This document shows, in pieces, positions 33,948 through 62,301 of a DNA stretch of 64,000 nt. Positions within the stretch are counted from its first letter, which is position 1; each line of letters begins with the position of its first letter. The notes beneath the pieces were generated by a model, which searched no databases, was not told the origin of the DNA, and worked only from the letters and a program-made list of their open reading frames with translations. Made by a program: the position numbers and the translations under genes. Location: contig CAJFCJ010000022.1 in the NCBI GenBank assembly GCA_904063045.1, positions 1 through 64,000 of the forward strand, in the 5' to 3' direction. The DNA is from Dimorphilus gyrociliatus (lineage: Eukaryota > Animalia > Annelida).

Positions 33948-36900
33948 TTAAACATTAACTTTATCATCCTCGCAATCGCTGATCAGTATATGGCAGTTTT
34001 TGCCTGTAAATCCAGCATCGCAAGTACAGAGGTATCCGTCTTTAAGTTGAGTACAAACTCCATTATTCAGACAGGGATTAGGAATACAGCTCTTTACTTC
34101 AGTTTCACAGTCTTTTCCGGTGAAACCTGCCTCGCAGGTACATTCGTATCCAGTTGGCTTGTTAATGCAAGTTGCTCCATTCAAACAAGGACACGATTCA
34201 CAGTAATCGATGATTTCATCACAGTTCTTGCCAGTATAGCCGTCGTCACAAATACATTGGTAGTTGTTAACTTCATTTATACATGTTGCACCGTTCATGC
34301 ACGGATCCGATTTACAGTTGTTAATAATGATGCAGCAATCTTTACCAGTATATCCAGGTTTGCATTGACATGCGAAATCATCAATCAAATTTTCACAAGT
34401 ACCGCCATGTAAACAAGGTTGTGATTCGCAGTTGTCAATAATTTGAGAACAATCCTTTCCTGTATATCCAGCTTTGCAAATACAATGATAGTCGTTAACC
34501 AAGTTCATACAGGTTCCATCATTTAGGCAGGGAGCAACATCACAGTTATCAATAATATCACAACAATCTTTTCCGGTGTATCCAGGTAGGCATGTGCATG
34601 TAAAGTCGTTTAATTTGTTACTACAAGTTCCTCCATGTTTGCATGGATTAGGTTGACAATTGTCAGTCATTTCTTCGCAATTTTTACCTTCGTAGCCGGC
34701 TGGACAATTGCATTCGTAAGCATTTTCGAGGTCATAACAAGTTCCTCCGTTTATGCAGGGATTCGAAGCGCATTCGTCAATGTCTAGTAAAGTATAAACA
34801 TTAATACAAATAATTATATATACAATTATCTTGCTTACCTTCACCGCAGTTTGTTCCTGTCCATCCTGGTTTACATCTACAGATGTAACCATCTACTCTG
34901 TCTTCACAGGTACCGCCGTTCTTACACGGGTTAGAAGCGCATTCGTCAATTTCCTGGTCACAATTCTTTCCAGTCCATCCAGAGTTACAACAGCATTCAT
35001 AATCATTAAGTAGATCTTTGCATGTTGCTCCGTTTCTGCATGGGTTCTCTGCACAATCGTCAATGTTATCGCCGCAATCCTTTCCAGTCCATCCAGCAAC
35101 ACAGGTACATTTGAAGTCATGAACAAGATCAGTACAAGTTCCTCCATTCAAACATGGTTTTGATAGACAATCGTCAATATTTTCATCGCAGTTTTTGTTC
35201 GTCCACCCTGGTGCGCATATGCACTGGTAGTCGTCTACTAAGTCTTTACAAGTTGCTCCATTCTTACAGGGTTTCGCTTTACAGTCATTAATATTATCGC
35301 CGCAATCTTTTCCGTTCCATCCAGGTGTACAGTCGCATTTGAAGTCGTCAATTAGGTCTGTACAACTACCACCGTTTAAGCATGGGTTTGATGCGCATTC
35401 GTTTATGTTAGTTTCGCAATTTCTTCCAGTATATCCAGGTTTGCAGAAACATTGGTAATCATCAACAAGATCCTTACAAGTGCCTCCGTTTACACACGGT
35501 TTGCCCTTGCAGTTATTGATATTTTCGCAGCAATCTTTACCAGTCCATCCAGGTAAGCAGGTACATTTGAAGTCGTGAACAAGATCAGTGCAAGTTCCAC
35601 CATTCAAACATGGCTTAGATTCACAATCGTCAATGTTTGTTTCGCAGTTGCGACCGGTATAGCCAGGTACACAGATACATTGATAGTCATTTACAAGATC
35701 TTTGCATGTTGCTCCATTCTTGCATGGATTTTCTAAACAGTTGTCAATATTAGTATGACAGTTCTTTCCAGTCCATCCTGGTTTACAGTCGCATTTGTAG
35801 TCGTCAAGAAGGTCTGTGCAAGTACCGCCATTCTCACAGGGATTTGAAGCACATTCATTGATATTAATTTGACAGTTAGGTCCAGTATAACCTGGCTCAC
35901 AGCAACATTCATAGCCGTTGAGAAGATCTTTGCAAGTGCCTCCATTATGACATGGATTTGATGCACAATCATCGATATTTTCTTTGCAATTCTTTCCAGT
36001 CCATCCGGAGGGGCATGTGCATCTGTAACCGTTAACAAGATCTCTGCAGGTTCCTCCATTTTCACATGGTCCGGATGCGCAATCGTCGATGTTATTTTCG
36101 CAATTTTTACCAGTCCATCCAGGTTCAACAACGCAGAAACATCTGTAATTGTTAACAAGATCCATACAAATACCACTGTGTTGACAAGGATTGGATTTAC
36201 AATCATCAATGTTTTCTCCACAATCTTTATCCGTCCATCCAGGTTTGCAGTTGCAGTTGTAGTCATCAATAAGATCAGTGCAAGCTCCGCCGTTCTTACA
36301 TGGATTAGAAGCACATTCATTGATGTTAGTCTCACAGTTCTTGCCAGTATATCCTGATTGACAACAGCACTCGTATCCCATGTGAAGATCTTTGCAGGTA
36401 CCTCCATTTTTGCAGGGGCCAGATGCACAATCATCAATATTATCTCCGCAGTCCTTACCAGTCCATCCCTGGGGACAAGTACACTTAAAGTCGCGATGGA
36501 GATCTTCGCATATGCCTCCATTCAAACAAGGCAAAGATGCACAGTCATCGATATTTTCTTCGCAATTTTCTCCAGTCCATCCTGGTCTACAAACACACTG
36601 ATAGTCATTCACTTTGTCGAGGCAAGTACCACCATTTCGGCACGGATTTTCAACACAATCATCAACGTTGTCACAACAGTCCTTGCCAGTCCATCCAGGA
36701 GTGCAAACACATCTGAAGTCATCGATTAAATCAGTACAACTGCCTCCATTCAAACAGGGGTTGGGTTGGCATTCGTTTATATTTGTTTCACAGTTAGTGC
36801 CAGTGAATCCAGGTTTACAGAAGCACTGATAACCGTTGACAAGATCTTTGCATGTTCCACCATTAATACATGGTAAACCTTTACAATCATTGATGTTCTC

Positions 36901-39900
36901 CTCACAGTTCTTTCCAGTGTATCCAACTTTGCAGTTACAATCATAATCATTGATTTTATCAGTACAAGTACCACCGTGCTTACAAGGATTTGAGATGCAT
37001 TCGTTGATGTTTTCATTACACAAGCGACCTGTCCAACCATGTTCACAAACACATTCATAGTTGTTTATATGGTCGACACAAGCAGCAGCATTAATGCAAG
37101 GCTTAGACGCACATTCGTCGATATCGTCACAGCAATCCTTTCCAGTCCAGCCAGGAGCACATGTGCATCTGAAATCATTAACTAGATCATGGCAAATTCC
37201 ATTGTGTTGACATGGGTTTGGTTTGCAATCATCAATGTTTTCATCGCAATGTTCACCAGTCCAGCCAGCGGCACAAATACATTGGTAATCATTCACAAGA
37301 TCTCTACATGTAGCTCCATTCTTGCACGGATTTGGTTTACACTCGTTTACATTCTCTTCACAAATTCTGCCCATCCAACCATGTTGACAAACACATTCAA
37401 ATCTGTTGACCTTGTCTACACAGGTTCCACCATTCTTACACGGGGATGAATCGCACTCATTGATATTATTTCCGCATGTCTTTCCAGTCCATCCAGGAGC
37501 GCAATTACAATCGAAATCATTGACTAAGTCATAGCAACTACCACCATTTTGACAAGGGTTTTCCATACAATCATCGACATTATCGCAACAGTCTTTTCCA
37601 GTCCATCCCGACGTACAGACACACTTGAAATCGTTCACAAGATCAGTACAACTACCACCATTCAAACATGGGTTTGGTTTACAGTCATCGATATTTATAT
37701 CACATATTGTTCCAGTATAACCTGGTACGCAAATACATTGATAGTTGTTCACCAAATCTTTGCAGGTAGCTCCATTTTTACACGGGTTTTCTATGCAATC
37801 ATCTATATTTATTTCACACATTTTTCCAGTGTATCCAGGGGGACACAAACAACTATAACCATTGATCTCATCAAAGCAAGTTCCGCCATGTCTGCAAGGC
37901 GTGGACAAACATTCGTTAATGTTGATTTCGCAATTCTTTCCAGTCCATCCTGGTTTACATACACATTGATAATCATTTACTTTGTCAAGACAAAGTGCAG
38001 CGTTATGACACGGATTTTCAGCACAATCATCGATGTTATCACAACAATCTTTTCCAGTCCAACCAGGTGTACAAGCACACTGGAAGTCATCAACAAGATC
38101 AGTACAGGTTCCACCGTTCAAACATGGTTTTGGTATACAGTCATCAATATTTTCGTCGCAATGACGACCAGTGTATCCAGACGAACAGATACATTGATAA
38201 TCATTCACCAAGTCTTTACATGTAGCTCCGTTCTTGCAAGGAGACTCAACGCAATCGTCAATATTGATTTCACAATTCTTTCCAGTATATCCAGGATTGC
38301 AAGTACATTTGTAATCGTTAATGAGATCTTGGCAAGTACCACCATGTCTGCACGGATTCGAAGAACATTCAATGATGTTTACACCACAGTTCTTTCCGGT
38401 CCAACCCGGTGGACAACCGCATTCATAACCATTTGGAAGATCGTAGCAAGTACCACCGTTTTTACATGGGTTTTCTAGACATTCGTTGACATCTTCACAG
38501 CAGTCTTTTCCAGTCCATCCAGGATTACAAATACATCTAAAGTCATTAACCTTATCTTGGCAAGTACCACCGTTTAAGCAGGGATTGGATGCGCAATCGT
38601 CAATGTTTTCACCGCAATCTTGGCCAGTCCAACCAGCAGCACAAATACACTGGTAGTCGTTTACAAGATCTTTACATGTAGCTCCGTTCTTACATGGGTT
38701 TTCTGCGCATTCGTTAACATTATCTTCACAGATTCTGCCAGCCCAGCCATGTGGACAAGTACATTCAAAACCATTCACTTTATCAAAACAAGTTCCACCG
38801 TGTTTGCAAGGATTAGATGCGCATTCGTCAATATTGATATCACAATTCTTTCCTATCCAACCAGCTTTACAAACGCATTTATAATCATTTACTTTATCTA
38901 GACATTCTGCTTCATTCTTGCATGGATTTTCAGCACAATCGTCGATATTTTCACAACAATCTTTTCCAGTCCAACCAGCTGTGCAGGTACAACTGAAGTC
39001 ATCAACCAAGTCTTGGCAAGTTCCACCGTTTTGACATGGGTTGGGTTTGCAGTCATCGATATCGATTTCGCATTTTGTACCTGTGTATCCCGATGCACAG
39101 ATACATTTATAATCGTCAATAAGATCTTTACAAGTAGCCCCATTTTTACAAGGGTTTTCAGCACATTCATCAATATTGATTTCGCAACTCTTGCCTGTAT
39201 AACCTGGAGCGCAATTGCACGAGTAATCGTTACTTCCATCGACGCAGGTACCGCTATGACGACATGGTTGAGATGCACATTCGTTAATATTTGTTTCACA
39301 GTCTTTTCCAGTCCATCCAGGAACGCAAGTACAACTATAATCATTAACCAAATCGAAGCATGTACCACCATTTTTACATGGATTTTCAACACAATCGTCA
39401 ACATTTTCACAACAATCTTTGCCAGTCCAGCCAGGTCGACAAATACATCTAAAGTCATCAATAAGATCTTGACAAGTACCGCCATTCAAACATGGGTTTG
39501 GTTTACAATCATTTATATCAATGTCACATATTTCACCAGTGTATCCGGATGCGCAAATACATTTATATCCATTCACAAGATCTTTGCATGTAGCTCCGTT
39601 CTTGCAAGGATTTTCTGCACAATCGTCAATATTGATTTCACAATTCTTTCCAGTATATCCAGGATTACAAGTACATTTGTAATCGTTAATGAGATCTTGG
39701 CAAGTACCACCATGTCTGCACGGATTCGAAGAACATTCGTTGATTTCTTGGCCGCAGTTCTTTCCAGTCCAACCAGGCATACAACCACAATAGTATCCAT
39801 TCTCTTGATCGTAGCAAGTACCACCGTTTTTACATGGGTTTTCTAGACATTCGTTGATATCTTCACAACAGTCTTTGCCAGTCCATCCAGCTGTACAAGC

Positions 39901-42900
39901 ACATTCAAAGTCATTGACAAGGTCTTTGCAAGTACCACCATTAAGGCAAGGTTGAGGGAAGCAATCGTCAATGTTTTCACCGCAATCTTGTCCAGTCCAA
40001 CCAGCGGCACAAATACATTGGTAGTCGTTTACAAGATCTCTGCATGTAGCTCCGTTTTTACATGGGTTTTCTGCGCATTCGTTAACATTTTCTTCACAGA
40101 TTCTACCAGCCCAGCCTTTGGGACACGTACAATCGTAACCGTTTACTCTGTCGATACAGGTTCCGCCGTGTTTACATGGGATGGAAGCACATTCGTCAAT
40201 ATTGATATCACAATTCTTTCCAGTCCATCCTGGTTTGCAGATGCATTGGTAATCGTTTACCTTATCAAGACATTCACCTTGATTTCTGCATGGATTTTCA
40301 GCACAGTCATCGATGTTATCACAACAATCTTTTCCAGTCCAACCAGGCAAACATTGACAACTGAAGTCATCAACGAGATCTGTACATGTTCCGCCATTCA
40401 AACATGGGTTGGGTTTGCAGTCATCGATATCGATTTCACAATTTCGGCCAGTGTAACCAGAATCGCAAATACATTGATAATCATTTACCAAATCTTTGCA
40501 AGTAGCTCCATTCTTACAAGGGTTTTCTTTGCAATCATTGATATTCCAGCCACATCTTTTTCCTGAAAATCCTGGTGGGCATGTGCAAGAATAATCATTT
40601 AGTTTGTCGGTACAACTACCGCCATTAAGGCATGGCTTCGATGCACATTCATCAATATCAATTTCGCAGTTTCGGCCTGTATAACCAGGTATACATGTGC
40701 AGACGTAGTCATTTATCAAATCGTAGCAGGTGGCGCCATTTATGCACGGGTTTTCAGCGCAATCGTTTATGTTATCACAACAATCTTTTCCTGTCCATCC
40801 AGCTACACAAGAACATTGGAAATCATTAACCAGATCGGTACAGGTTCCACCATTCAAACAAGGACTGGATTCACATTCATTGATGTCAGTTTGGCAATTT
40901 GTTCCAGTATAACCAGGAGCACAAATGCATTGGTAACCATTTACTAAATCTTTGCAAGTAGCACCATTTTTGCATGGATTTTCGGCGCAGTCGTCTATAT
41001 TTTTTTCGCAAAGTGGTCCAGTATAGCCAGGTTGACATGTACAGACAAAGCCATTTATTTGATCCCGACAAGTTCCGCCATTTCTGCACGGATCTGAAAC
41101 ACATTCATCAATTGGAACATCACAATTTTCTCCCATCCAACCAGGAGCACAATCACAATAATATCCATTGACCTTATCATAACATGTTCCTCCATTCTTG
41201 CAAGGATTTTCAATACATTCATCGATGTCGTCACAACAGTCCTTACCAGTCCATCCTGGTGGACAATTACATAGGAAGTCGTTTACAAGGTCTTTGCATG
41301 TACCACCATTTAAGCATGGATTCGGTGCACAATCATCAATGTTTTCACCACAATCTTCACCAGTCCAACCGGCAGCACAAATACATTGGTAGTCGTTTAC
41401 AAGATCTTTACACGTAGCTCCATTCTTACACGGGTTTTCTGCGCATTCGTTAACATTATCTTCACAGATTCTACCAGCCCAGCCATGTACACAGGTACAC
41501 TCATAACCATTGACCTTATCAAGACAAGTTCCACCATGTTTACAAGGATTAGACGCACATTCATCGATATCGATATCGCAATTCTTTCCAGTCCAACCAG
41601 CTTTACAAACGCATTGGTAATCATTAATTTTGTCGAGGCATACAGCACCGTTCTTGCATGGGTTTTCAGCACAGTCATCAATGTTGTCGCAGCAATCTTT
41701 TCCAGTCCAGCCAGGTCGACAAATACATCTGAAATCATCAACTAAATCTTGACAAGTTCCACCATTATCACAGGGATTAGGTGAACAATCATCAACATCA
41801 ATGTCACAAATTCTTCCCACATATCCAGCTGCACAAATACACTGGAAATCATTTACAAGATCTTTACATGTTGCGCCATTCTTGCAAGGATTTTCAATGC
41901 AATCGTCAATATCAATTTCACAGCTCTTTCCAGTGAACCCTTCACGACAGTCGCATAAATAGTCATTTACTCTGTCTCTGCAAGTACCGCCATTTCGACA
42001 AGGGGAAGAGGCACATTCGTTAATGTTGGTTTCACAATCCTTTCCAGTCCATCCTGGAACACAGGTGCAAGCATAGTTGTTGATCAAATCGTAACAAGTT
42101 GCACCGTTTTTACATGGACCATTAGCGCAGTCATCGATGTTATCACAGCAATCTTTACCGGTCCAACCAGGGGTACATGCACACTGGAAGTCATCAACAA
42201 GATCAGTACAGGTTCCACCATTCAAACATGGGTTTGGTTTACAGTCATCAATATTTTCGTCGCAATGACGACCAGTGTATCCAGACGAACAGATACATTG
42301 ATAATCATTCACCAAGTCTTTACATGTAGCTCCGTTCTTGCAAGGAGACTCAACGCAATCGTCAATATTGATTTCACAATTCTTTCCAGTATATCCAGGA
42401 TTGCAAGTACATTTGTAATCGTTAATGAGATCTTGGCAAGTACCACCATGTCTGCACGGATTCGAAGAACATTCAATGATGTTTACACCACAGTTCTTTC
42501 CGGTCCAACCCGGTGGACAACCGCATTCATAACCATTTAGAAGATCGTAGCAAGTACCACCGTTTTTACATGGGTTTTCTAGACATTCGTTGACATCTTC
42601 ACAACAATCTTTGCCAGTCCATCCAGGATTACATATACATCTAAAGTCATTAACCTTATCTTGGCAAGTACCACCGTTTAAGCAGGGATTGGATGCGCAA
42701 TCGTCAATGTTTTCACCGCAATCTTGGCCAGTCCAACCAGCAGCACAAATACATTGATAATCGTTTACAAGATCTCTGCATGTAGCCCCATTCTTACATG
42801 GGTTTCCTGCGCATTCGTTAACATTATCTTCGCAAATTCTACCAGCCCAGCCTTTGGGACAAGTACAATCGTAACCGTTTACTCTGTCGATACAGGTTCC

Positions 42901-45900
42901 GCCGTGTTTGCATGGGTTGGAAGCACATTCATCAATATTGATATCACAGTTCTTTCCAGTCCATCCTGCTTCGCAGACACATTGGTAATCGTTTACCTTA
43001 TCAAGACATTCACCTTGATTTCTGCATGGATTTTCAGCACAGTCATCGATGTTATCACAACAATCTTTTCCAGTCCAACCAGGCAAACATTGACAACTGA
43101 AGTCATCAACGAGATCTGTACATGTTCCGCCATTCAAACATGGGTTGGGTTTGCAGTCATCGATATCGATTTCACAATTTCGACCTGTGTAACCAGAATC
43201 GCAAATACATTGATAATCGTTTACCAAATCTTTGCAAGTTCCTCCATTTTTACAAGGGTTTTCAGCGCACTCATCAATATTGATTTCGCAACTCTTGCCT
43301 GTATAACCTGGAGCGCAATTGCACGAGTAATCGTTTTCGCCATCTGTGCAAGTACCGCTATGACGGCATGGTTGAGATGAACATTCATTAATGTTTGTTT
43401 CACAGTCTTTTCCAGTCCATCCGGGAAGACATTTACAAGTATAATCATTAACCAAATCGAAGCATGTACCACCATTTTTACATGGATTTTCAACACAATC
43501 GTCAACATTGTCACAACAATCTTTGCCAGTCCAGCCAGGTCGACAAATACATCTAAAGTCATCAATAAGATCTTGACAAGTTCCACCATTCAAACATGGG
43601 TTTGGTTTACAATCATCAATATTTTCGTCGCAATGACGACCAGTGTATCCAGAGGAACAGATACATTGATAATCATTAACCAAGTCTTTACATGTTCCTC
43701 CGTTGTTACAAGGATTTTCAGCACATTCGTCAATATTGATTTCACAATTCTTTCCAGTATATCCAGGATTACAAGTACATTTGTAATCGTTTATAAGATC
43801 TTGGCAAGTACCACCATGTCTGCACGGATTCGAGGAACATTCGTTGATTTCTTGACCGCAGTTCTTTCCAGTCCAACCAGGCATACAACCACAATAGTAT
43901 CCATTCTCTTGATCGTAGCAAGTACCACCGTTTTTACATGGGTTTTCTAGACATTCGTTGATATCGTCACAACAGTCTTTGCCAGTCCATCCAGCTGTAC
44001 AGGCACACTCAAAGTCATCGACAAGGTCTTTGCAAGTACCACCATTAAGGCAAGGTTGAGAGAAGCAATCGTCAATGTTTTCACCGCAATCTTCACCAGT
44101 CCAACCAGCAGCACAAATACATTGGTAGTCGTTTATAAGGTCTTTGCATGTAGCTCCGTTCTTACATGGGTTTTCTGCGCATTCGTTAACATTATCTTCA
44201 CAGATTCTACCAGCCCAGCCTTTATGACATGTACAATCGTAACCATTTACTCTGTCAATACAAGTTCCGCCGTGTTTGCATGGGTTGGAAGCACATTCGT
44301 CAATATTGATATCACAATTCTTTCCAGTCCATCCTGGTTTGCAGACGCATTCGTAATCGTTAACCAAGTCTAAACATTTGCCTTGATTCTTACATGGATT
44401 TTCAGCACAGTCATCGATGTTATCACAACAATCTTTTCCAGTCCAACCAGGCAAACATTGACAACTGAAGTCATCAACGAGATCTGTACATGTTCCGCCA
44501 TTCAAACATGGGTTGGGTTTGCAGTCATCGATATCGATTTCACAATTGCGACCGGTGTAGCCGTAATCGCAAATACATTGATAATCATTTACCAAATCTT
44601 TGCAAGTTCCTCCATTTTTACAAGGGTTTTCAGCACATTCATCAATATTGATTTCGCAACTCTTGCCTGTATAACCTGGAGCGCAATTGCACGAGTAATC
44701 GTTTTCGCCATCTGTGCAGGTACCGCTATGACGGCATGGTTGAGATGAACATTCATTAATGTTTGTTTCACAGTCTTTTCCAGTCCATCCGGGAAGACAT
44801 TTACAAGTATAGTCATTAACCAAATCGAAACATGTACCACCATTTTTACATGGATTTTCAACACAATCGTCAACATTATCACAACAATCTTTGCCAGTCC
44901 AGCCAGGTCGACAAATACATCTAAAGTCATCAATAAGATCTTGACAAGTTCCACCATTCAAACATGGGTTTGGCTTGCAGTCATCTATGTCAGTTTGACA
45001 ATTTCGACCAGTATACCCGGATGGACAAATACATTGATAATCATTAACCAAGTCTTTACAGGTTCCTCCGTTCTTACAAGGATTTTCAGCACAGTCGTCA
45101 ATATTAAATTCACAATTCTTTCCAGTATATCCAGGATTACAAGTACATTTGTAATCGTTTATGAGATCTTGGCAAGTACCACCATGTCTGCACGGATTCG
45201 AGGAACATTCGTTGATTTCTTGACCGCAGTTCTTTCCAGTCCAACCAGGCATACAACCACAATAGTATCCATTCTCTTGATCGTAGCAAGTACCACCGTT
45301 TTTACATGGGTTTTCTAGACATTCGTTGATATCGTCACAACAGTCTTTGCCAGTCCATCCAGCTGTACAAGCACACTCAAAGTCATCGACAAGGTCTTTG
45401 CAAGTACCACCATTAAGGCAAGGTTGAGAGAAGCAATCGTCAATGTTTTCACCGCAATCTTCACCAGTCCAACCGGCAGCACAAATACATTGGTAGTCGT
45501 TTACAAGATCTTTGCAAGTAGCTCCGTTTTTACAAGGGTTTTCTGCGCATTCGTTAACATTATCTTCACAGATTCTACCAGCCCAACCTTTGGGACACGT
45601 ACAATCGTAACCGTTTACTCTATCAATACAGGTTCCGCCGTGTTTGCATGGGTTGGAAGCACATTCATCAATATTGATATCACAGTTCTTTCCAGTCCAT
45701 CCTGGTTTGCAGATGCATTGGTAATCGTTTACCTTATCAAGACATTCACCTTGATTTCTGCATGGATTTTCAGCACAGTCATCGATGTTATCACAACAAT
45801 CTTTTCCAGTCCAACCAGGCAAACATTGACAACTGAAGTCATCAACGAGATCTGTACAAGTTCCGCCATTCAAACATGGGTTGGGTTTGCAGTCATCGAT

Positions 45901-52234: not shown

Positions 52235-53470
52235 CTCTAAGATTTGCTCAAAAATTATCGGATGATTGAAATATAGGCCTCAGTGTTCACAAAAAAAATC
52301 AATTTTTTAACTTTTTTTTTAAAGAAAATATGAAAAATTAAAGAAAATATGGTAATCTTTTAAAGAAAAGTCAGTCTTAAAAGTATTAAGATTCTAGACT
52401 AGTCGTAAATTATCATTTCAAAATAGTATAGACATTTTTAATTTTTCGCGAATGGAATAATATCTTATCTTATCTTTTTGAGAATAGGGAATTTATTATT
52501 TATTGTACATGCATTATGATAGTTATGGATGTTTAAGTTGATTAACAATGATATATCAGATAATTGAATTAGTTTAAAGTCTCTTCCAGAAGTAATATAA
52601 GATTGTTATAGATTAATTAAGTGAACTTTCATTCCCTCTGTCAGTTTTTTTCCCATCTATTCACGAATAACTTATTAAGTGAAGAGTATATTAACTCCCA
52701 TTCCAAGATATCTTCAAAGTGAATGTTAATAAACTACACTAAATTTGTATATATGTACGTGTAAATGATCTTATAATCAGTTATTAAGGTTTTTGGAGGA
52801 AGAAGAACTTGTGGAAAGTTTAACAGACAAGATAAATTCACTAAATAGAGTATAATATATAAATGATAATAACAAAACAATAATCATGATTTATTAAAAC
52901 TTTATTAAAATCATATAGAAAAATCATTATTCGTAGTATATAGATGTTTTTTATTGAAATTGTTATATAAAACGTTACAGTTTTTTGGGTAATTACGTGT
53001 CAGCGTTCATTTTTTACGGACAGACAGATTTTTTTTAAAGCTACATGTCGAGCAATGTCATGTTGTTTTTGTCCCCAAAAAGAGAAGAGAGCATTTGCCA
53101 CGTTGAAACTTCAAAAAAAACTGTTTTTGAGCAATGAAAACACAGGTGTATAACGAAATTTTCTTGTCCGCCCCCATACGAGGACAGTCGGAGACAAGAG
53201 TTCATAGCGTCAATTGCTGTAAGTTATTTTAAGTATAATTTTTCATTATTCTACTGATAAAACTATAAAATAAAACTTAATATTTCATTGATACGGTTGA
53301 TAATAATGTATTTTTTTCATATTTTTATATAAACAAATAGGACAAGCAGTATTCACCAAAGTTTTGCGGAAACAAAAGTCTCACTTTGGGAAGGTAAACA
53401 TCTATTTAAATAAAATTTGTATATGAATAAATTTTAAAATGCGTTTTTCATCCATAGAGTAAACTCTTTG

Positions 53471-53968
53471 ATGATGCTTACGATTGTTGTATTGTGTATA
53501 GTTGGACAAGCAATTTCGGCTCCCTTCGGTAATCGTAGATTAATTATAGATGAGGAGGAGGTAGCCGGAAGATTTTCAGAAATGATAATGAAACCATGCG
53601 ATTCCAGTCCATGCTTTAATGGTGGGACCTGCGAAAATTTGAACGACGGTAGCAATTTTGAATGTAGGTGTTTGCCAACTTATTTAGGCACACAATGCAA
53701 CATCAAGGTGAACTTTTGTCTGTCGGAACCTTGCATGAATGGAGCAACCTGCAGCAATACCTCTACGGGACCTTTGTGTACTTGTGCCGCGGGATTCACC
53801 GGCACTGTATGTCAACATTTGACCAACAGTTGCAATTCTAATCCTTGTTTAAACAATGGAATTTGCATAGAATCAGAGAGTAGTTATGTTTGTTCGTGTA
53901 AAGCCTGTTTCTTTGGTAGAGACTGTGAGAGAATTGTAGTTGATTGTCAGTCTGATATTGTAATGTAA
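53471..53968 (+). CDS. Small secreted 3-EGF protein (gene C, inverted paralogue)
   Basis: Signal peptide LCIVGQAISAP resembles [11 protein letters not shown] (A) and CLLLGQVIVS (B); three EGFs; upstream TATATAAA (~53327) and a 5'UTR intron 53394-53456. Confidence 0.82.
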   Translation: MMLTIVVLCIVGQAISAPFGNRRLIIDEEEVAGRFSEMIMKPCDSSPCFNGGTCENLNDGSNFECRCLPTYLGTQCNIKVNFCLSEPCMNGATCSNTSTGPLCTCAAGFTGTVCQHLTNSCNSNPCLNNGICIESESSYVCSCKACFFGRDCERIVVDCQSDIVM

Positions 53969-54399
53969 ATTGAAGATACTGTTAAACTATAAAACTTTCT
54001 GGTTATTGTTTTGCATATGCTGAATTTGTAGAACGTTTCGAAAGTTTATGAATTCTTTAAATAAATTAAAATTTAAATATTTAGATTTTTTAGACTTTCA
54101 AAGATTTTTTTTGATGAATTCGTTAAGATGAATAACGAATAGGTTATGAGAAAACTGCTCTAGCACGACATATCCTTATAAGACCTTTGGTGAATAATTC
54201 ATTCGCACTTTTATCTGTTTATTTCTTTCATAAATGATGAACATAGGCAACGTAAAGAGTGAAGTCGTTTCAGTAGTTTCCACTTTGAATGTTACGTTTA
54301 TATTAGTTGTCATCATTTCCATAAACTTTGTCCTCTACATTTGAACAAACTGAAAAGGATATCGTCTACTTTCTATTTTGAACAAAAAGCTTTCTCTCA

Positions 54400-55260
54400 T
54401 ATTTTTGTCAAACAAAATTTGATAGGGATTTTGGTCACATTCGTCATCGATAATTCCGTAATCTTTTCCAGATAATCCAAGCAAACATTGACAGCTTTTT
54501 ATAACTATTTATTAAAATCTTGACGTGTACTCTCATTCTAAGATAGAATTTAAATTATAGGCATCAAATGCATCCCTGATTTTGCAAATATTTCTCACAG
54601 TTGCCCTGAAGAGCAATCAAACATTTAGCAAGTCAGCAAACTTTCTTTTCTGCAAAATGTGCTATACTACCCAGCGATTGCATAGTTCGTGCTATCAGTA
54701 CCATATGCTCAAGTTTTTGATCTTGAGATATGCCTAAAACTATCTTACCTGCAAAATGATAGTACTTAATTCCATGTTTACAAGTTCCACCATCTTAACA
54801 AAGAAGTGATTCACATTCATATTTATCTTTCACAAGACCTTTCAGCATTTAGGCAGAAAAGAGAGGCAGATTCATCAACATTTGTTATTATGGCAATAAC
54901 AAAATATAGGAATTTAAACAATTGTGACGTGCTCCATCATTAAGACCAAGATTTGAATAACAGTTATCATACAATACCAATCATTTCTTTTTCAGAAAAT
55001 TCGACTTTACACATACATTTATAATTGTTTGTAAGATCTCTATATGCGCTTTCGTTTCACAATGATTTAACTTGCTATTGTCACTTTTCATTTCGGAATT
55101 ATCTGCGAAGTATTCAGGTAGACAATTACATTTTTAGACGTACTCAAATAGTCAACAACTTCCACCACTCCTGTATGTAATTTGGTTGCCAAAGCTTCTT
55201 GAACATTTCTTTGCAGATGCAATCAATTATTGCTTTCTTGTAGTTTCACCAGAGCTAATG
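54400..55260 (-). pseudogene. Decayed EGF-repeat array
   Basis: The minus strand gives frameshifted, stop-ridden EGF fragments: RDLTNNYKCMCK, NVDESASLFCLNA, YECESLLC*DGGTCKHG, CQCLLGLSGKDYGIIDDEC. Confidence 0.65.
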
Positions 55261-55618
55261 GAAAAATTAATCAATTGCATTAATTTCAGATAGGTACCAA
55301 TACGGTATATATGGATTTTTTACGTAATATCCAAAGAAATATGGACAATAAACTACTTAGAATTTGGAAAAAATAGAAAAAGTTGAATTAAATGTAAAAA
55401 AAAGCAAAAAATTTGAATATAAAATTTTATTATAGAAATTTGAGCAAATTTTAATTAGAATTTAAAAAACAAAGTTCAAAAAAGGAAATAAATATAAAAT
55501 TTCAAAATGTAAAACAAAATAGTTCAAACTGAACTTTGACATGAGAACGCAATATTTTAAATATTACAATTTCTGTAATTGTATATCCTATTCTAGTATT
55601 GTTATTCAAGCATAAATA

Positions 55619-58600
55619 TTACTTTTGTTTTTGGCATCTCTTTCCTTTCCAAGGTTTCTTACATTTGCATTTGTAACCATATTTATAATTCTTACAAATG
55701 CCACCATTCAAACAGGGAGAACTACTGCAAGCATTCTTCGATTTTTCACAATATTTTCCTTTATATCCCTTCGGACACGAACATTTGAATCCACCTTTAT
55801 AATCTTTACACTTTCCACCATTTTTGCAGGGGTTAGGATTACAGGTACCCTTTTTGAGCTCGCAATGTTTTCCATAATATCCTTTCTTACAATAACACTT
55901 GTAAAAGAAGAAACCTATTGGCTTACATTTTCCACCATTTTTACAAGGCTTAGATTTGCATGGATACTTTGCAATAATAGGTTTTTCACAATATTTTCCA
56001 GTATATCCTTTCGGACACGAACATTTCACGCCACCTTTATATTGTGTACACTTTCCACCGTTTTTGCAGGGATTAGGTTTACAGGTATCCTTTTTGAGCT
56101 CGCAATGTTTTCCATAATATCCTTTTGGACAGTAACACTTGTAAAAGAAGAAACTTATTGGCTTACATTTTCCACCATTTTTACAAGGATTAGGTTTGCA
56201 TGGATACTTAATAGGCTTTTCACAATATTTTCCAATATATCCTTTCGGACACGAACATTTCACGCCACCTTTATATTGTGTACACTTTCCACCGTTTTTG
56301 CAGGGATTAGGTTTACAGGTATCCTTTTTGAGCTCGCAATGTTTTCCATAATATCCTTTTGGACAGTAACACTTGTAAAAGAAGAAACTTATTGGCTTAC
56401 ATTTTCCACCATTTTTACAAGGATTAGGTTTGCATGGATACTTAATAGGCTTTTCACAATATTTTCCAATATATCCCTTCGGACACGAACATTTGACTAT
56501 GCCTTTATAATCATTACACTTTCCACCATTTTTACAGGGGTTAGGTTTACAGATATCCTTTTTGTGCTGGCAATGTTTTCCATAATATTCTTGTTTACAT
56601 TTGCAAGAATATTTATTAGTTTGCTCTAGGCAAGTTCCACCATTTTGACAAGGACTCGAGTTACATTCCTTTATATCCTCATCGCAATTTATTCCGGTAT
56701 TTCCCGGACTACATTGACAAGTATAACCATTTACCCCATCTTTACAAGTTCCGCCATTCAAACACGGAGAAGAAGCGCATTCATTAATATTTATCTCGCA
56801 ATCGTCTCCGGAGAAACCAGGTAGACAGTTACATTTATAGCTATTTCCAAATGGTTGACAAACTCCACCATTCTGACAAAAATTTGGGTTACAAGGGTTT
56901 TTGAGCGTACATTTACAAATATCATGAGTTATTTTACTCTTATATTTTCCCAAATCATTGAAACTATCAATGTAAATGACTTTGCTGGCATCACTGGCAA
57001 TTCCTTCAATTTCGGATTTTTTAAAACGAGGCCCTACTGAAACAACAAATATTTTAACGCCAAGTTTTGTAAACATTTTCAATTGATTAGCTGTTGGAAC
57101 GGTCTTGGCCTTATTTTTGTTTGATGGTCCATCCGTGAAAAGAACAACAATATTTGGAATATTTTCTCTCTCTCCATTAGACACTTGAAAAACATGATCC
57201 ATTTCTAATTGAAGAGCATCCGCTGTATTTGTCAATCCACGGGAATATGGAATTGCATCAATTGCAGAAAGAATGCTAGCTCTATTGTTGTAATCATCAA
57301 AGTCGAACCTTAACACCGCTTTAGTTCCAAAAGTAATTGTTCCTATCCGTGTATGCGACGGAGAAATATCAAAAGCATCAGTCAGATCTCTAATGAAGCT
57401 TTTTTGTAAATTGAAGTTTAGATTTCCAAGAGAACCGCTTGTATCTATAATCCAGGAAAGATCCATCGGATTACACTCTAAAAAAAACATACAAATTAAC
57501 AATATCATTCATATTGGTAACATTTGACTTACCAAGGCTACATAACTTTCCAAAAAATCCAGACTTACATTCACAGTAAAAGCCATCTTTAACATTTTTA
57601 CATATACCGCCATTGTTACAAGGATTTGTCGGTTTACAAAAATCTTTAAGTTCGCAATTGCTTCCGGAATATCCAAAAGGACATTTGCATATATAACCAG
57701 ATAGCTGGTCAACACATGTACCACCATTCAAACATGGATTTTTCAAAAAACATTCGTTTTTATGCTCACACTTCTTTCCATAATAACCAGGAGGACATTT
57801 ACATGAATAGCCAAATTTATGACCAAAACATGTACCACCGTTAAAACAGGGATTATTTGGAAAACATAAGTTTTTGAATTCACACTTCTTTCCATAATAA
57901 CCAGGAGGACATTTACAAAAGTAGCCATTTGGTAAATCATTGCATATTCCGCCATTTAGACATGGATTTTTCGGTATACATTCGTTTTTCAGCTCACAAT
58001 GCTTTCCATAATATCCAGGGGGACACTTACAGAAATAACCAGCTTTTTGTTCAATGCATTTACCACCATTATAACATGGATTTTTTGGGAAACAGTTGTG
58101 TTTAAACTCACAATTCTTTCCGTAGAATCCAAGAGGACATTTACAAAAATAGCCATTTGGTAAATCATTGCATATTCCGCCATTTAGACACGGATTTTTC
58201 GGTACACATTCGTTTTTCAGCTCACAATGCTTTCCATAATATCCAGGGGGACACTTACAGAAATAACCAGCTTTTTGTTCAATGCATTTACCACCATTAT
58301 AACATGGATTTTTTGGGAAACAGTTGTATTTAAACTCACAATTTTTTCCATAGAATCCAAGAGGACATTTACAAAAGTAGCCATTTGGTAAATCATTGCA
58401 TATTCCGCCATTGAGACATGGATTTTTCGGTATACATTCGTCTTTCAGCTCGCAATGCTTTCCATAATATCCTAGGGGACACTTACAGATATAGCCAATT
58501 TTTTGATCAATGCATTTACCACCATTATAACATGGATTTGTTGGAAAACATGAGTTTTGTTCCTGACAAAGCTTTCCAAAATATCCAGGAGGACATTTGC

Positions 58601-61600
58601 AAAAAAAGCCATTTGGTAAATCATTGCATATTCCGCCATTGAGACATGGATTTTTAGGTACACATTCGTTTTTCAACTCACAATGCTTTCCATAATATCC
58701 TAAGGGACACTTACAGATATAGCCAAATTTTTGTTCAATGCATTTACCACCGTTATAACATGGATTTTTTGGGAAACAGTTGTATTTAAACTCACAATTC
58801 TTTCCGTAGAATCCAAGCGGACATGTACAAAAATAGCCATTTGGCAAATCATTGCATATTCCGCCATTTAGACAAGGATTTTTCGGTTTACAGTCGTTTT
58901 TGAATTCACAATTCGGTCCAAAATATCCTAGGGGACATGTACAAAAATATCCAATTGGTAGATCATTGCATGTTCCGCCATTTTTACAAGGATTTTTTGG
59001 TAAACAGCTATTTTTGATTTCACAATTCTTTCCAAAGTAACCCAGGGGACACTTGCATGAATAGCCAATTGGTAGATCGATGCATGTTGCGCCATTTTTA
59101 CATGGTTTTTTGGTTATACATTCGTTTTCAAGCTCACAATTTTTTCCACTAAATCCCTTGGGACACGAACATGAATATCCAACTGGTAGATCATTACATG
59201 TTCCGCCATTTTTACAAGGATTTTTTGGTAAACAGCTATTTTTGATTTCACAATTCTTTCCAAAGTAACCCAGGGGACACTTGCATGAATAGCCAATTGG
59301 TAGATCAATGCATGTTGCGCCATTTTTACATGGTTTTTTGGTTATACATTCGTTTTCAAGCTCACAATTTTTTCCGCTAAATCCCTTGGGACACGAACAT
59401 GAATAGCCAACTGGTAGATCATTGCATGTTCCGCCATTTTTACAAGGATTTTTTGGTAAACAGCTATTTTTGATTTCACAATTCTTTCCAAAGTAACCCA
59501 GGGGACACTTGCATGAATAGCCAATTGGTAGATCGATGCATGTTGCGCCATTTTTACATGGTTTTTTGGTTATACATTCGTTTTCAAGCTCACAATTTTT
59601 TCCACTAAATCCCTTGGGACACGAACATGAATAGCCAACTGGTAGATCATTACATGTCCCGCCATTTTTACAAGGATTTTTTGGTAAACAGCTATTTTTG
59701 ATTTCACAATTCTTTCCAAAGTAACCCAGGGGACACTTGCATGAATAGCCAATTGGTAGATCAATGCATGTTGCGCCATTTTTACATGGTTTTTTGGTTA
59801 TACATTCGTTTTCAAGCTCACAATTTTTTCCGCTAAATCCCTTGGGACACGAACATGAATAGCCAACTGGTAGATCATTGCATGTTCCGCCATTTTTACA
59901 AGGATTTTTTGGTAAACAGCTATTTTTGATTTCACAATTCTTTCCAAAGTAACCCAGGGGACACTTGCATGAATAGCCAATTGGTAGATCAATGCATGTT
60001 GCGCCATTTTTACATGGTTTTTTGGTTATACATTCGTTTTCAAGCTCACAATTTTTTCCGCTAAATCCCTTGGGACACGAACATGAATAGCCAACTGGTA
60101 GATCATTGCATGTTCCGCCATTTTTACAAGGATTTTTTGGTAAACAGCTATTTTTGATTTCACAATTCTTTCCAAAGTAACCCAGGGGACACTTGCATGA
60201 ATAGCCAATTGGTAGATCAATGCATGTTGCGCCATTTTTACATGGTTTTTTGGTTATACATTCGTTTTCAAGCTCACAATTTTTTCCACTAAATCCCTTG
60301 GGACACGAACATGAATATCCAACTGGTAGATCATTACATGTTCCGCCATTTTTACAAGGATTTTTTGGTAAACAGCTATTTTTGATTTCACAATTCTTTC
60401 CAAAGTAACCCAGGGGACACTTGCATGAATAGCCAATTGGTAGATCAATGCATGTTGCGCCATTTTTACATGGTTTTTTGGTTATACATTCGTTTTCAAG
60501 CTCACAATTTTTTCCGCTAAATCCCTTGGGACACGAACATGAATAGCCAACTGGTAGATCATTACATGTCCCGCCATTTTTACAAGGATTTTTTGGTAAA
60601 CAGCTATTTTTGATTTCACAATTCTTTCCAAAGTAACCCAGGGGACACTTGCATGAATAGCCAATTGGTAGATCAATGCATGTTGCGCCATTTTTACATG
60701 GTTTTTTGGTTATACATTCGTTTTCAAGCTCACAATTTTTTCCACTAAATCCCTTGGGACACGAACATGAATATCCAACTGGTAGATCATTACATGTCCC
60801 GCCATTTTTACAAGGATTTTTCGTTATACATTCGTTTTCAAGCTCACAATTTTTTCCGCTAAATCCCTTGGGACACGTACATGAATATCCAACTGGTAGA
60901 TCAATGCATGTTGCGCCATTTTTACATGGTTTTTTCGTTATACATTCGTTTTCAAGCTCACAATTTTTTCCACTAAATCCCTTGGGACACGAACATGAAT
61001 ATCCAACTGGTAGATCATTACATGTTCCGCCATTTTTACAAGGATTTTTCGTTATACATTCGTTTTCAAGCTCACAATTTTTTCCACTAAATCCCTTGGG
61101 GCACGAACATGAATATCCAACTGGTAGATCAATGCATGTTGCGCCATTTTTACATGGTTTTTTCGTTATACATTCGTTTTCAAGCTCACAATTTTTTCCG
61201 CTAAATCCCTTGGGACACGTACATGAATAGCCGATTGGCAGTTGCTTACAAGTTCCACCGTTTTGACACGGATTAGGGTTGCAATCGCTTGCTGTTGCCT
61301 TGCAGGTTTCATCCAGTATTATTGCTTTATATTTTTCCAAATCGTTGAAATTGTTTACTTTTATGATTTTTGACTTATCTGTTGCTATTGCTTCTATTTC
61401 ATTGTTATTTATGTTGCTTCCTACAGGAACAGCAAATACGGTTACGCCAAGATTAGTCGCTTTCTTCAATAAGTCAGCTTGTGTTTTAGTACCCCCTGGA
61501 TTAGCTGAGGCACCATCTGTGAAAACAAGTGCAATATTTTTTATCTTTATTCTATCTCCATGTATGGGAACAAAGATTCGTTCTCTTGCAAGTTTTAGTG

Positions 61601-62149
61601 CTAGGTCCGTTCGTGTACCTCCATTGGGAAAAGTGGTAGTTGCAAGCGCGTTTAGAATAAGTTGTTTGTTAGAGTTGAAATCATTCAGATCAAACCTTAC
61701 AATCGCGTTGTGGTCAAAAATAATTGCAGCTACTCGTGTTTTTGTAGGGCCTACATCGAATGAATCGGTAAGGCCTTTAATGAAATCCATTTGCTTTTTA
61801 AAATTGCTAGATCCAATTGACCCACTGCCATCTATAATCCAGCAAAGATCTACTGGAGCGCATTCTGAAACAATAATAAGTGTTTTTAAAGTTATAAAAT
61901 TGAGACGATTGACTTACCGAGCTCACATCGTTTTCCAGCAAAACCAGGTTTACATATGCATTCAAAATCGTTTTTAATATTATTACACTTCACGAACCTT
62001 CCTGCAAAGCAAGGATTTTTGGAACATAAATCAGTTGTCAGGGACACTCTTCCATTTTCAGCAGATGATTCATTCAATACTGAAGTCTCATCACCTAGTG
62101 AAACGATGACTTGCCCCAGAAGGAGACAAACCCATATAACCCGTAACAT
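55619..62149 (-). CDS. Secreted SP-EGF-vWA-(EGF)33-vWA-(EGF)11 protein, ~2,140 aa (gene B)
   Basis: Exons 62149-61918, 61864-57533 and 57477-55619 sum to 6,423 nt in frame with phase-1 GTAAGT/AG introns. Both vWAs have intact MIDAS (DGSGS, DTSGS); the C-terminal EGFs are very K/Y/F/P/G-rich. Confidence 0.9.
58980..60720 (-). repeat. 228-nt (2-EGF) tandem repeat, 7 full copies plus partial flanks
   Basis: Shadow ORFs at 59114, 59342, 59570, 59798, 60026, 60254, 60482, spaced 228 nt; the copies are protein-identical. Confidence 0.95.
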
Positions 62150-62212
62150 TCTAAAAAGACAAAATATTGTCAATAATAAATAAAAAATGCGAAGAAGTTG
62201 TTAAAATTCATA

Positions 62213-62301
62213 CTTACATAGTTTTAAGGCAGAGTCTTTTCTTCCTTAAGCGACGTTATGGCTACAACGCAACGATAAAGAAAAGTCATCGGCTTTTATA
62301 G
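62213..62301 (-). promoter_or_regulatory. TATA box and 5'UTR exon of gene B
   Basis: TATAAAA on the minus strand at ~62295-62301; the UTR exon ends at a GTAAGT donor (~62218); acceptor at 62151 immediately before the ATG, same layout as gene A. Confidence 0.55.

What the first reader, a model, noticed from the sequence alone, without database searches (positions are those of the whole stretch)
33948..62301. Candidate undescribed secreted glue/matrix system: oppositely charged vWA-EGF paralogues plus a small Cys linker
Seen: three related secreted genes share a signal-peptide pattern, a TATA box and a 5'UTR intron, and a decayed fourth array lies among them. Gene A is strongly acidic (one 4-EGF unit counted: 27 D/E vs 12 K/R) with spare Cys. 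The gene B tail is strongly basic (one 2-EGF unit: 18 K vs 3 D/E, 8 Tyr) and its EGFs have no spare Cys. Gene C carries two spare Cys. None has a membrane anchor, and the architecture is not Notch, fibropellin or matrilin (no coiled coil). Established: sandcastle-worm cement uses oppositely charged proteins, mussel Mfp-2 is a K/Y-rich EGF array, and vWA domains occur in invertebrate adhesive and byssal proteins. Inference: the genes are co-expressed components of a coacervate-like adhesive, mucus, cocoon or cuticle fibre cross-linked by disulfides and Tyr/Lys chemistry.
Basis: partly seen in the sequence, partly recalled or inferred. Interest (0 to 1): 0.9.

Follow-up and report, generated by a model that had tools for sequence, protein, structure and literature searches.

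The report
Secreted vWA-EGF matrix gene cluster
A small marine worm has three neighbouring, heavily transcribed genes for secreted rod-like proteins (one giant and acidic with regularly spaced spare cysteines, one basic and rich in lysine and tyrosine, one tiny), which probably build a cross-linked extracellular material, but whether that material is a glue, mucus, cocoon or ordinary tissue matrix is untested.

Summary
The window matches GCA_904063045.1, which I take to be Dimorphilus gyrociliatus.

- **Gene A** (33948-52086, minus): SP-EGF-vWA-148 EGF, 5905 aa, pI 4.2, net charge -515.
- **Gene B** (55619-62302, minus): SP-EGF-vWA-33 EGF-vWA-11 EGF, 2140 aa, pI 8.8. Its tail is 20% Lys and 8% Tyr.
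- **Gene C** (53149-54070, plus): SP plus 3 EGF, 165 aa, two spare Cys.

Four public RNA assemblies confirm the splice joints, including the one that makes B a single two-vWA gene. All three mRNAs are abundant and rise and fall together across the four runs.

The strongest new fact is a seventh cysteine in gene A. It is invariant in 30 of 30 four-EGF units at exactly 152-aa spacing, although the units have diverged to as little as 38% identity. None of 229 other EGF-array proteins retrieved here shows this.

The glue/coacervate reading is only partly supported:
- The domain kit matches known marine adhesives. The best single-domain solved match for the vWA is mussel PTMP1, and the tail matches Pvfp-5.
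- Gene A's acidity follows largely from its calcium-binding EGF consensus.
- EGF arrays are folded rods, not disordered polyelectrolytes.
- No tissue or proteomic evidence exists.

Other scan notes cover parts of this same stretch, not other DNA. Verdict: real, and a good candidate for a structural secretion, but its function is unproven.

The parts
33948..52086 (-). Gene A: TATA box 52073-52086; 5'UTR introns 51939-52021 and 51832-51883; CDS exons 51830-51596 (signal peptide + EGF), 51540-50971 (vWA), 50915-34839 (16,077-nt exon, 141 EGF), 34783-33948 (7 EGF + stop). Product 5905 aa, pI 4.22.
   Evidence: Models. RNA joints, and a loose end that matches the start of exon 2. Pfam. Composition.
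35771..49438 (-). Approximate span of the 30 four-EGF units of gene A (protein residues 457-5016). Each ends in the motif KDCC; the second C is the seventh, spare cysteine, at strict 152-aa spacing.
   Evidence: positions 608 to 5016 in steps of 152. (invariant in 30/30 units; unit identity 38-100%; median pS 0.78; pN/pS 0.25). (33 of 145 EGFs in A, against at most 1 in each of 229 other EGF-array proteins).
53149..54070 (+). Gene C: TATA 53149-53153; 5'UTR introns 53219-53340 and 53394-53457; CDS 53471-53968; mRNA 3' end about 54070-54096. Product 165 aa: signal peptide + 3 EGF, pI 4.5, spare Cys at residues 146 and 159.
   Evidence: Joints and contig ends. Cys parse. Exact match to an annotated 165-aa product.
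55584..62302 (-). Gene B: TATA 62290-62302; predicted 5'UTR intron 62151-62217; CDS exons 62149-61918 (signal peptide + EGF), 61864-57533 (vWA1 + 33 EGF), 57477-55619 (vWA2 + 11 EGF); mRNA 3' end about 55584. Product 2140 aa, pI 8.78.
   Evidence: The intron 57478-57532 is spliced out in all 4 RNA runs. The annotated product is also 2140 aa.
55619..56911 (-). Lys/Tyr-rich basic EGF tail of gene B (residues 1711-2140): pI 9.28, 20% K, 1 Arg, 8% Y, 3.2 Tyr per EGF, with a 234-nt two-EGF repeat.
   Evidence: Pvfp-5 (7qab) match at E 1.9e-15.
54420..55230 (-). Relics of 3-4 EGF domains with stops and frameshifts, downstream of B's 3' end. Transcribed only weakly.
   Evidence: tblastn and blastn fragments plus three-frame translation. 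Low depth.
52098..52103 (-). CGTGGC hexamer just upstream of A's TATA box. The same hexamer lies upstream of C's TATA (53097-53102) and B's TATA (62385-62390). Candidate shared cis-element.
   Evidence: Only 9 occurrences in the 64 kb. It is the only G+C-containing hexamer shared by the three promoter regions.

Best explanation
The three genes are a tandem family of abundant secreted structural proteins that together build a covalently cross-linked extracellular fibre or gel. Most likely this is a material that post-embryonic females release to the outside: mucus, adhesive or cocoon jelly.

**Gene A.** It makes a very long rod of 149 EGF domains. Most carry the Ca-binding consensus, so seawater Ca2+ should stiffen the rod; I estimate a length of about 0.4 um from about 2.5-3 nm per EGF. 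It has a MIDAS-type vWA head. Every fourth EGF carries a conserved unpaired cysteine, so rods can be laddered in register by intermolecular disulfides.

**Gene C.** This small acidic 3-EGF protein has two spare cysteines. It could bridge or cap those thiols.

**Gene B.** It is a two-headed (two vWA) basic rod. Its Lys/Tyr-rich tail has no spare Cys and resembles mussel EGF-type foot proteins in composition. It would bind anionic partners or surfaces and could be cross-linked through Tyr/Lys chemistry.

**Shown:** gene structures, splicing, secretion signals, absence of an anchor, domain content, charge, periodic conserved Cys, high and covarying mRNA abundance.

**Inferred:** assembly, partners, site of secretion and function.
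For: - Clean gene models and domains.
- Splice joints in RNA assemblies, including B's vWA2 joint in all four runs.
- Contig word depths in runs X2/X4/X5/X6: A 1714/371/19/18; C about 12000/1300-3400/41/38; B about 15000/8000/62/597. The mRNAs are therefore very abundant and covary.
- A coral-tank metatranscriptome also holds the locus.
- There is no transmembrane segment.
- The MIDAS residues DxSxS, T and D are intact in all three vWA domains.
- The vWA's best single-domain solved match is byssal PTMP1, E 1.2e-23.
- The spare Cys is invariant in 30/30 diverged units, with pN/pS 0.25, and is unique among 229 EGF-array proteins.
- C has two spare Cys and B has none.
- Opposite charges.
- A shared CGTGGC promoter hexamer.
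- Females enclose their eggs in gelatinous cocoons and have several gland types (PMC5101659; bioRxiv 10.1101/491886).
- EGF arrays and vWA domains are recurrent in marine adhesives.
Against: - There is no spatial expression data and no proteomics of any secretion.
- The identity and stage of the four RNA runs is hidden, and depths are not normalised, so co-expression is shown only at whole-sample level.
- The same features (signal peptide, EGF rods, vWA heads, high expression after embryogenesis) fit tissue matrix or cuticle equally well.
- The spare Cys might pair within the molecule or serve redox buffering.
- TATA boxes are common in this genome.
- The CGTGGC motif was found post hoc.
Confidence: 0.45

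Rival explanations
1. Ordinary tissue extracellular matrix. A, B and C are matrilin-, AMACO- or fibrillin-like components of basement membrane, cuticle or apical matrix. Epidermal or mesodermal cells make them, and they link collagen or other matrix fibres through their vWA heads. They are not released as a glue or cocoon.
For: - B has the matrilin-like order vWA-EGF(n)-vWA.
- The vWA domains are nearest to collagen VI and matrilin-type A domains.
- Giant secreted EGF arrays are widespread in echinoderms, rotifers and amphioxus, and are usually annotated as fibrillin-, fibropellin- or eyes-shut-like matrix proteins.
- Expression that rises after embryogenesis would also fit growth of cuticle or matrix.
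Against: - There is no coiled coil, collagen triple helix, ZP, laminin-G or other matrix-anchoring domain.
- The Lys/Tyr-rich, nearly Arg-free tail and the periodic free Cys are not features of the matrix proteins retrieved here.
- The very high mRNA depth and the repeat arrays homogenised within each gene are more typical of bulk secretory products.
Confidence: 0.3
2. A and B are the polyanion and polycation of a complex coacervate, as in sandcastle-worm cement. They phase-separate on mixing and then cure through disulfides and Tyr/Lys chemistry.
For: - Net charge is -515 for A and +126 for B, with +64 in B's 430-aa tail.
- The mRNAs covary.
- Lys/Tyr pairs promote cohesion and coacervation in mussel foot proteins (PMC9314366).
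Against: - A's acidic residues sit largely in the Ca-binding consensus of 120 of 145 EGFs. Bound Ca2+ would cancel part of that charge, and seawater ionic strength screens the rest.
- Both proteins are disulfide-locked folded EGF rods, not flexible disordered polyelectrolytes.
- The charge density is modest: about 0.09 negative charges per residue in A and 0.06 positive charges per residue in B.
- No tyrosinase or peroxidase gene was seen in the cluster.
Confidence: 0.1
3. The genes are neighbouring paralogues with separate jobs, such as clotting or wound sealing, pathogen agglutination, or egg-envelope formation. Their opposite charges would then be incidental.
For: - vWA and EGF modules are used in clotting and immunity in many animals.
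- Tandem duplicates often diverge in function.
- The ratio of B to A depth varies between runs, from 3 to 34 fold.
Against: - The depths show the same ordering across the four runs.
- A and C lie head to head, about 1 kb apart, and the three promoters share a hexamer.
- The Cys features are complementary: A has many spare Cys, C has two and B has none.
Confidence: 0.15

Closest known systems
Matrilins (vertebrate vWA-EGF-vWA-coiled-coil matrix adaptors) and AMACO/VWA2
   Same: They are secreted. Gene B has the same domain order, vWA then EGF repeats then vWA. The A domains have an intact MIDAS and are related to collagen VI-type A domains.
   Different: There is no C-terminal coiled-coil oligomerisation domain. 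B instead ends in 11 basic EGFs, has 33 rather than 1-10 central EGFs, and starts with an extra EGF. A has a single vWA followed by 148 EGFs.
Mussel EGF-type foot proteins (Mfp-2; Pvfp-5beta, PDB 7QAB)
   Same: B's tail is an array of EGF domains with exposed Lys and Tyr: 20% K, 8% Y, basic pI. It aligns to the whole two-EGF Pvfp-5 chain at E 1.9e-15. In Pvfp-5beta the Lys and Tyr residues are solvent exposed on a rigid EGF scaffold (PMC9314366).
   Different: Notch and Delta EGFs score higher than Pvfp-5, so the match is generic EGF homology plus composition. The tail is fused to two vWA domains and 33 further EGFs. DOPA modification and presence in an adhesive are unknown. Mfp-2 itself could not be retrieved for comparison.
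Mussel byssal proximal thread matrix protein 1 (PTMP1, PDB 4CN8)
   Same: It is the best single-domain solved-structure match for A's vWA domain (E 1.2e-23). It is a secreted MIDAS-type A domain in an extracellular fibre.
   Different: PTMP1 consists of two vWA domains with no EGF array. Collagen binding has not been tested here.
Flatworm temporary-adhesion proteins Mlig-ap1 and Mlig-ap2 (PMC6410801)
   Same: They are giant secreted proteins co-expressed in adhesive glands. One combines a fibrillin-like run of 17 Ca-binding EGFs with strongly positive Lys/Arg regions. Charge interactions control attachment and release.
   Different: Those proteins carry vWD, TIL, lectin, LDLa and TSP1 domains and disordered KR-rich regions. 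The proteins here have vWA heads and only folded EGFs. No sequence relation was found.
Sea urchin fibropellins and the 'fibropellin-like' giant EGF arrays of other invertebrates
   Same: They are long secreted arrays of Notch-type EGFs. These are the names that automatic annotation gives to the best database hits.
   Different: There is no avidin-like C-terminal domain. A has a vWA head and a periodic seventh Cys, which is absent from all 229 retrieved arrays.

Membership tests
Matrilin | vWA domain(s) flanking a run of EGF domains | tested here: met
   Gene B has vWA1, then 33 EGF, then vWA2. RNA joints show one transcript.
Matrilin | C-terminal alpha-helical coiled-coil oligomerisation domain | tested here: not met
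   B ends in 11 EGFs directly followed by the stop codon. A and C also end a few residues after their last EGF. Pfam finds nothing other than EGF and VWA.
Fibropellin | EGF array followed by a C-terminal avidin-like domain | tested here: not met
   Pfam finds only EGF-type families across A. A ends 14 residues after its last EGF.
Notch / Delta / Jagged | Transmembrane segment plus LNR or DSL modules | tested here: not met
   There is no hydrophobic segment beyond the signal peptide and no LNR, DSL or ankyrin Pfam hits.
Mussel EGF-type foot proteins (Mfp-2 / Pvfp-5) | EGF repeats enriched in Lys and Tyr, basic pI | tested here: met
   B's tail has pI 9.28, 20% K, 8% Y and 3.2 Tyr per EGF.
Mussel EGF-type foot proteins (Mfp-2 / Pvfp-5) | Specific sequence kinship beyond generic EGF homology | tested here: inconclusive
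   Pvfp-5 matches at E 1.9e-15, but Delta and Notch EGFs score higher. Mfp-2 was not among the best 120 database hits and could not be fetched.
Mussel EGF-type foot proteins (Mfp-2 / Pvfp-5) | Tyr converted to DOPA, and presence in an adhesive plaque | not testable with these tools
   This needs protein chemistry and proteomics of secretions.
PTMP1-type byssal vWA matrix protein | MIDAS-containing vWA domain (DxSxS, T, D) | tested here: met
   A has DASGS, B1 has DGSGS and B2 has DTSGS, each with the conserved T and the TDG motif. PTMP1 is the best single-domain PDB match.
PTMP1-type byssal vWA matrix protein | Collagen binding within a fibre | not testable with these tools
   This needs a binding assay.
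Sandcastle-worm-type coacervate cement | Disordered polyanion (polyphosphoserine) paired with disordered polybasic proteins | tested here: not met
   Both proteins are wall-to-wall six-Cys EGF domains. A's charge comes from Asp/Glu, largely in the Ca-binding consensus of 120 of 145 EGFs.

The most novel reading that the evidence does not exclude
A, C and B form a previously undescribed annelid biomaterial. A is a Ca2+-stiffened acidic EGF rod, by my estimate about 0.4 um long, carrying one conserved free cysteine every four EGFs (152 aa). These rods are zipped in register into a disulfide ladder, either directly or through the bivalent mini-protein C. The Lys/Tyr-rich, two-headed protein B then condenses the fibre or sticks it to surfaces. 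This would be the cocoon jelly or the temporary adhesive of a meiofaunal worm, built on folded EGF rods rather than disordered polyelectrolytes.
Probability: 0.2. Interest if true: 0.75.

Novelty: new variant of a known kind. Interest (0 to 1): 0.45.

Why it matters
If these are the main proteins of a Dimorphilus secretion, they would be a molecular entry point into adhesion or cocoon formation in a meiofaunal annelid; I found no paper that describes one. The animal has a compact sequenced genome and is easy to culture.

The design rule is also unusual. A folded, calcium-stiffened EGF rod carries a strictly periodic cross-linking cysteine, and it is paired with a Lys/Tyr-rich EGF partner. This differs from the disordered-protein glues that dominate the field and could be copied in recombinant materials.

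If instead they turn out to be ordinary matrix proteins, the periodic seventh cysteine is still a distinctive and testable feature of a giant EGF protein.

Tried and rejected
1. **Searching for orthologues or a named family with this architecture.**
   - Three word-indexed searches were run: B's vWA1 within the whole exon, B's last exon, and A's first 700 array residues. They returned collagen VI-like multi-vWA proteins and generic 'fibropellin/Notch/Delta/eyes-shut-like' EGF arrays at 30-50% identity.
   - A few proteins mix vWA and EGF: octopus P0091, Argonauta P0274 with (vWA-EGF) x 8, a coral protein, Nematostella, and the JGI protein P0009. None has SP-EGF-vWA-EGF(n).
   - The exhaustive search with A's vWA was swamped by multi-vWA proteins. 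The only close single-vWA hit was a 245-aa fragment, P0376 (61% identity), from a 3-kb Logan contig of run ERR14224705. It has the same exon layout, but its DNA could not be fetched.

2. **An apparent 'back-joint' 54820 to 51596 in the read layout.** I rejected it as an artefact. The 27 letters 'between' lie in A's exon 3 at 50262-50288. The contig is therefore the normal e1-e2-e3 mRNA, and its off-stretch part aligned weakly to the EGF relics.

3. **Promoter alignment.** It showed no extended similarity; only the CGTGGC hexamer is shared. My recollection that this is an ACGTGG-core bZIP site (CrebA/CREB3L, XBP1, ATF6) could not be confirmed in the paper library.

4. **Literature.** I found no paper on these genes, on gland transcriptomes, or on secretion proteomes of Dimorphilus.

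5. **Normalised expression per stage.** This was not possible. There was one read-laying run, the run identities are coded, and contig depths are not normalised.

Full report
**What is there**

The 34-62 kb part of the window stands out from its 30% G+C surroundings at about 41% G+C. It holds three genes whose models translate cleanly.

- Gene A (minus strand) has four coding exons: 51830-51596 (signal peptide plus one EGF), 51540-50971 (vWA), 50915-34839 (a single 16,077-nt exon) and 34783-33948. The product is 5905 aa.
- Gene B (minus strand) has three coding exons: 62149-61918 (signal peptide plus EGF), 61864-57533 (vWA1 plus 33 EGF) and 57477-55619 (vWA2 plus 11 EGF). The product is 2140 aa.
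- Gene C (plus strand, head to head with A) has one coding exon, 53471-53968. The product is 165 aa, a signal peptide plus three EGFs.
- Every intron that precedes a vWA exon is phase 1.

The exact 165-aa product of C is annotated on NCBI record GCA_904063045.1 / CAJFCJ010000022.1. It is flanked there by products of 5889 and 2140 aa. The scan's notes name the genome as Dimorphilus gyrociliatus. I did not verify the species name independently beyond that accession and the genome's tiny introns.

**RNA evidence**

Four public assemblies hold the locus in spliced form, so they are RNA.

- Joints confirm both 5'UTR introns of A (51939-52021, 51832-51883) and both of C (53219-53340, 53394-53457).
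- In all four runs the 55-nt intron 57478-57532 is spliced out, which joins B's first array to its second vWA. B is therefore one gene, and the basic tail belongs to it.
- Loose ends at 51596 read straight into A's vWA exon.
- B's mRNA ends near 55584 and C's near 54070-54096.
- Word depths in runs X2/X4/X5/X6 are about 1714/371/19/18 for A, about 12000/1300-3400/41/38 for C and about 15000/8000/62/597 for B.
- The transcripts are therefore very abundant in two runs and low in two, with the same ordering for all three genes.
- These depths are not normalised and the run identities are coded. This shows covariation between whole samples, not co-expression in one cell type.
- A coral metatranscriptome also holds a quarter of the stretch.
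- An odd 'goes back' joint was an alignment artefact from A's exon 3.

**Domains and chemistry**

Pfam finds only EGF-type families and VWA. There is no avidin, LNR, DSL, ZP, collagen or coiled-coil region, and no hydrophobic segment after the signal peptides.

The three EGF-vWA modules are paralogues at 43-52% identity. All keep the MIDAS residues DxSxS, T and TDG. The signal peptides share a C(L)L(V)GQ core, including that of C.

| Part | pI | Net charge | Other |
|---|---|---|---|
| A, whole | 4.22 | -515 | 21-28 D/E against 7-13 K/R per 4-EGF unit |
| B, whole | 8.78 | +126 | first array has 156 Lys and no Arg |
| B tail, 430 aa | 9.28 | +64 | 20% Lys, one Arg, 8% Tyr, 3.2 Tyr per EGF |
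| C, whole | 4.5 | -7 | acidic |

Two cautions apply.
- 120 of 145 parsed EGFs in A carry the Ca-binding prefix, and 139 carry the Asx-hydroxylation consensus. Much of A's acidity is therefore the ordinary signature of calcium-binding EGFs, and bound Ca2+ would partly neutralise it.
- The lack of Arg in B's first array reflects recent amplification of one 228-nt unit (15 copies, 91% matches). It is not 33 independent events.

**The spare cysteines**

This is the most distinctive feature.

- From residue 608 to 5016 of A, a seventh Cys follows the sixth Cys of every fourth EGF (motif KDCC). The spacing is exactly 152 aa, 30 times.
- In the more diverged C-terminal part the spare Cys sits elsewhere (ECCC, CESCPC), at a similar density. 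The total is about 38.
- The 30 units are not fresh copies. Pairwise identity runs from 38% to 100% (median 67%), median synonymous difference is 0.78 and pN/pS is 0.25. The spare Cys is invariant in 30/30 units, like the structural cysteines.
- Among 229 other proteins with at least 10 EGFs retrieved by the searches, none has more than one EGF followed by an extra Cys. A has 33 of 145.
- C has two spare Cys (residues 146 and 159). B's EGFs have none.

A conserved, periodically exposed thiol on a long rod points to covalent in-register cross-linking. That step is inference.

**Relatives**

Database searches found no protein with the SP-EGF-vWA-EGF(n) layout.

- A's array hits giant EGF arrays from echinoderms, rotifers, amphioxus and bivalves at 35-50% identity. 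Their automatic names include fibrillin-, fibropellin- and eyes-shut-like.
- B's last exon hits generic Notch, Delta or fibropellin-like proteins.
- B's vWA1 hits collagen VI-like proteins.
- The exhaustive vWA search gave one close single-domain hit, a 245-aa fragment at 61% identity. It lies on a 3-kb contig of run ERR14224705, where a separate vWA exon is followed by a 739-aa ORF running off the contig. This is the same layout as gene A, so at least one other organism has an orthologue.
- Among solved structures, A's vWA matches collagen VI alpha-3 and then, as the best single-domain hit, mussel byssal PTMP1.
- B's tail aligns to the whole two-EGF mussel adhesive Pvfp-5 at E 1.9e-15, although Notch and Delta EGFs score higher.

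**Promoters**

All three genes have a TATA box at the distance from the first RNA-covered bases that one would expect. [quoted passage not shown]

The promoters do not align. They do share the hexamer CGTGGC 30-100 nt upstream of the TATA box. That hexamer occurs only nine times in the 64 kb, and it is the only G+C-containing hexamer common to the three regions. It resembles ACGTG-core bZIP sites of secretory-cell regulators. That resemblance is from my memory and could not be confirmed in the papers searched.

**The 'fourth array'**

Between C and B there are only 3-4 recognisable EGF relics with stops and frameshifts, at about 54420-55230 on the minus strand. They are transcribed at low depth.

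**Interpretation**

The literature supports the general frame.
- Tandem EGF domains recur in adhesives of mussels, limpets, sea urchins, sea anemones, sea stars and flatworms (PMC9382459; PMC7333891).
- Scallop byssus is dominated by EGF-domain proteins and includes vWA proteins with DxSxS and TDG motifs (PMC9168380).
- Flatworm glue combines Ca-binding EGFs with strongly positive regions, and charge controls attachment and release (PMC6410801).
- Dinophilid females wrap their eggs in a gelatinous cocoon and have several gland types (PMC5101659; bioRxiv 10.1101/491886).

The best-supported reading is therefore an abundant, secreted, disulfide-cross-linked structural material built from an acidic giant rod, a small bivalent Cys protein and a basic Lys/Tyr-rich two-headed rod.

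Where that material ends up cannot be told from sequence: outside the animal (glue, mucus or cocoon; my estimate 0.45) or in tissue matrix or cuticle (0.3).

The specific coacervate model is weak (0.1). The proteins are folded rods of modest charge density, and A's charge is tied to Ca2+ binding.

**Novelty and score**

The genes are in the public annotation but unnamed, and I found no paper on them. The domain kit is the known one for marine structural secretions. The particular architecture, the clustered acidic/basic pair and above all the conserved 152-aa cysteine period are new variants.

The interest is moderate. This is a well-defined, testable candidate, not a demonstrated new system.

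Noticed in passing
window 52098-52103, 53097-53102, 62385-62390: The hexamer CGTGGC occurs only 9 times in the 64 kb, yet three copies lie just upstream of the TATA boxes of A, C and B. It may be an ACGTG-core bZIP site shared by the three genes. That factor assignment is from my memory only.
   Followed up: partly
Logan contig of run ERR14224705 (protein P0376; DNA not retrievable): A 3-kb contig from another sample encodes a vWA exon 61% identical to A's, with the same flanking exon boundaries. A 739-aa ORF follows and runs off the contig. This is a probable orthologue of gene A in another organism.
   Followed up: partly
window 55619-56911 (gene B tail) compared with 34839-50915 (gene A): The O-fucose consensus (C2-x4-S/T-C3) is present in 125 of 145 EGFs of A and in 23 of 33 EGFs of B's first array, but in only 2 of 11 tail EGFs. 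In the tail the Thr is replaced by Lys (NGGKC). The tail has therefore shifted from Notch-like glycosylatable EGFs to Lys-coated ones.
   Followed up: no
window 55945-56654 (loose ends): Several abundant RNA contigs leave B's tail into EGF sequence that is not in this window (for example ...DVDECEDASI and ...EDDINECLS when translated). Other highly expressed EGF-array paralogues therefore exist elsewhere in the genome.
   Followed up: no
P0091 (Octopus bimaculoides) and P0274 (Argonauta hians): Cephalopods have secreted proteins that also mix basic EGF repeats with vWA domains. Octopus has an Arg/Tyr-rich EGF array, then vWA, EGF and vWD. Argonauta has eight vWA-EGF units. Their functions are unknown.
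   Followed up: no
window 32699-33666, plus strand: ORFs just upstream of gene A's 3' end look like exons of an ionotropic glutamate-receptor-type channel. They are unrelated to the cluster.
   Followed up: no
window 33948-51830: The public annotation gives gene A a 5889-aa product. My model gives 5905 aa and is supported by RNA at its 5' end. The 16-aa difference was not traced.
   Followed up: no
runs X1: A coral metatranscriptome holds 23-29% of the sampled words of this locus. The worm, or a very close relative, was living in that coral sample and expressing these genes strongly enough to be assembled.
   Followed up: no
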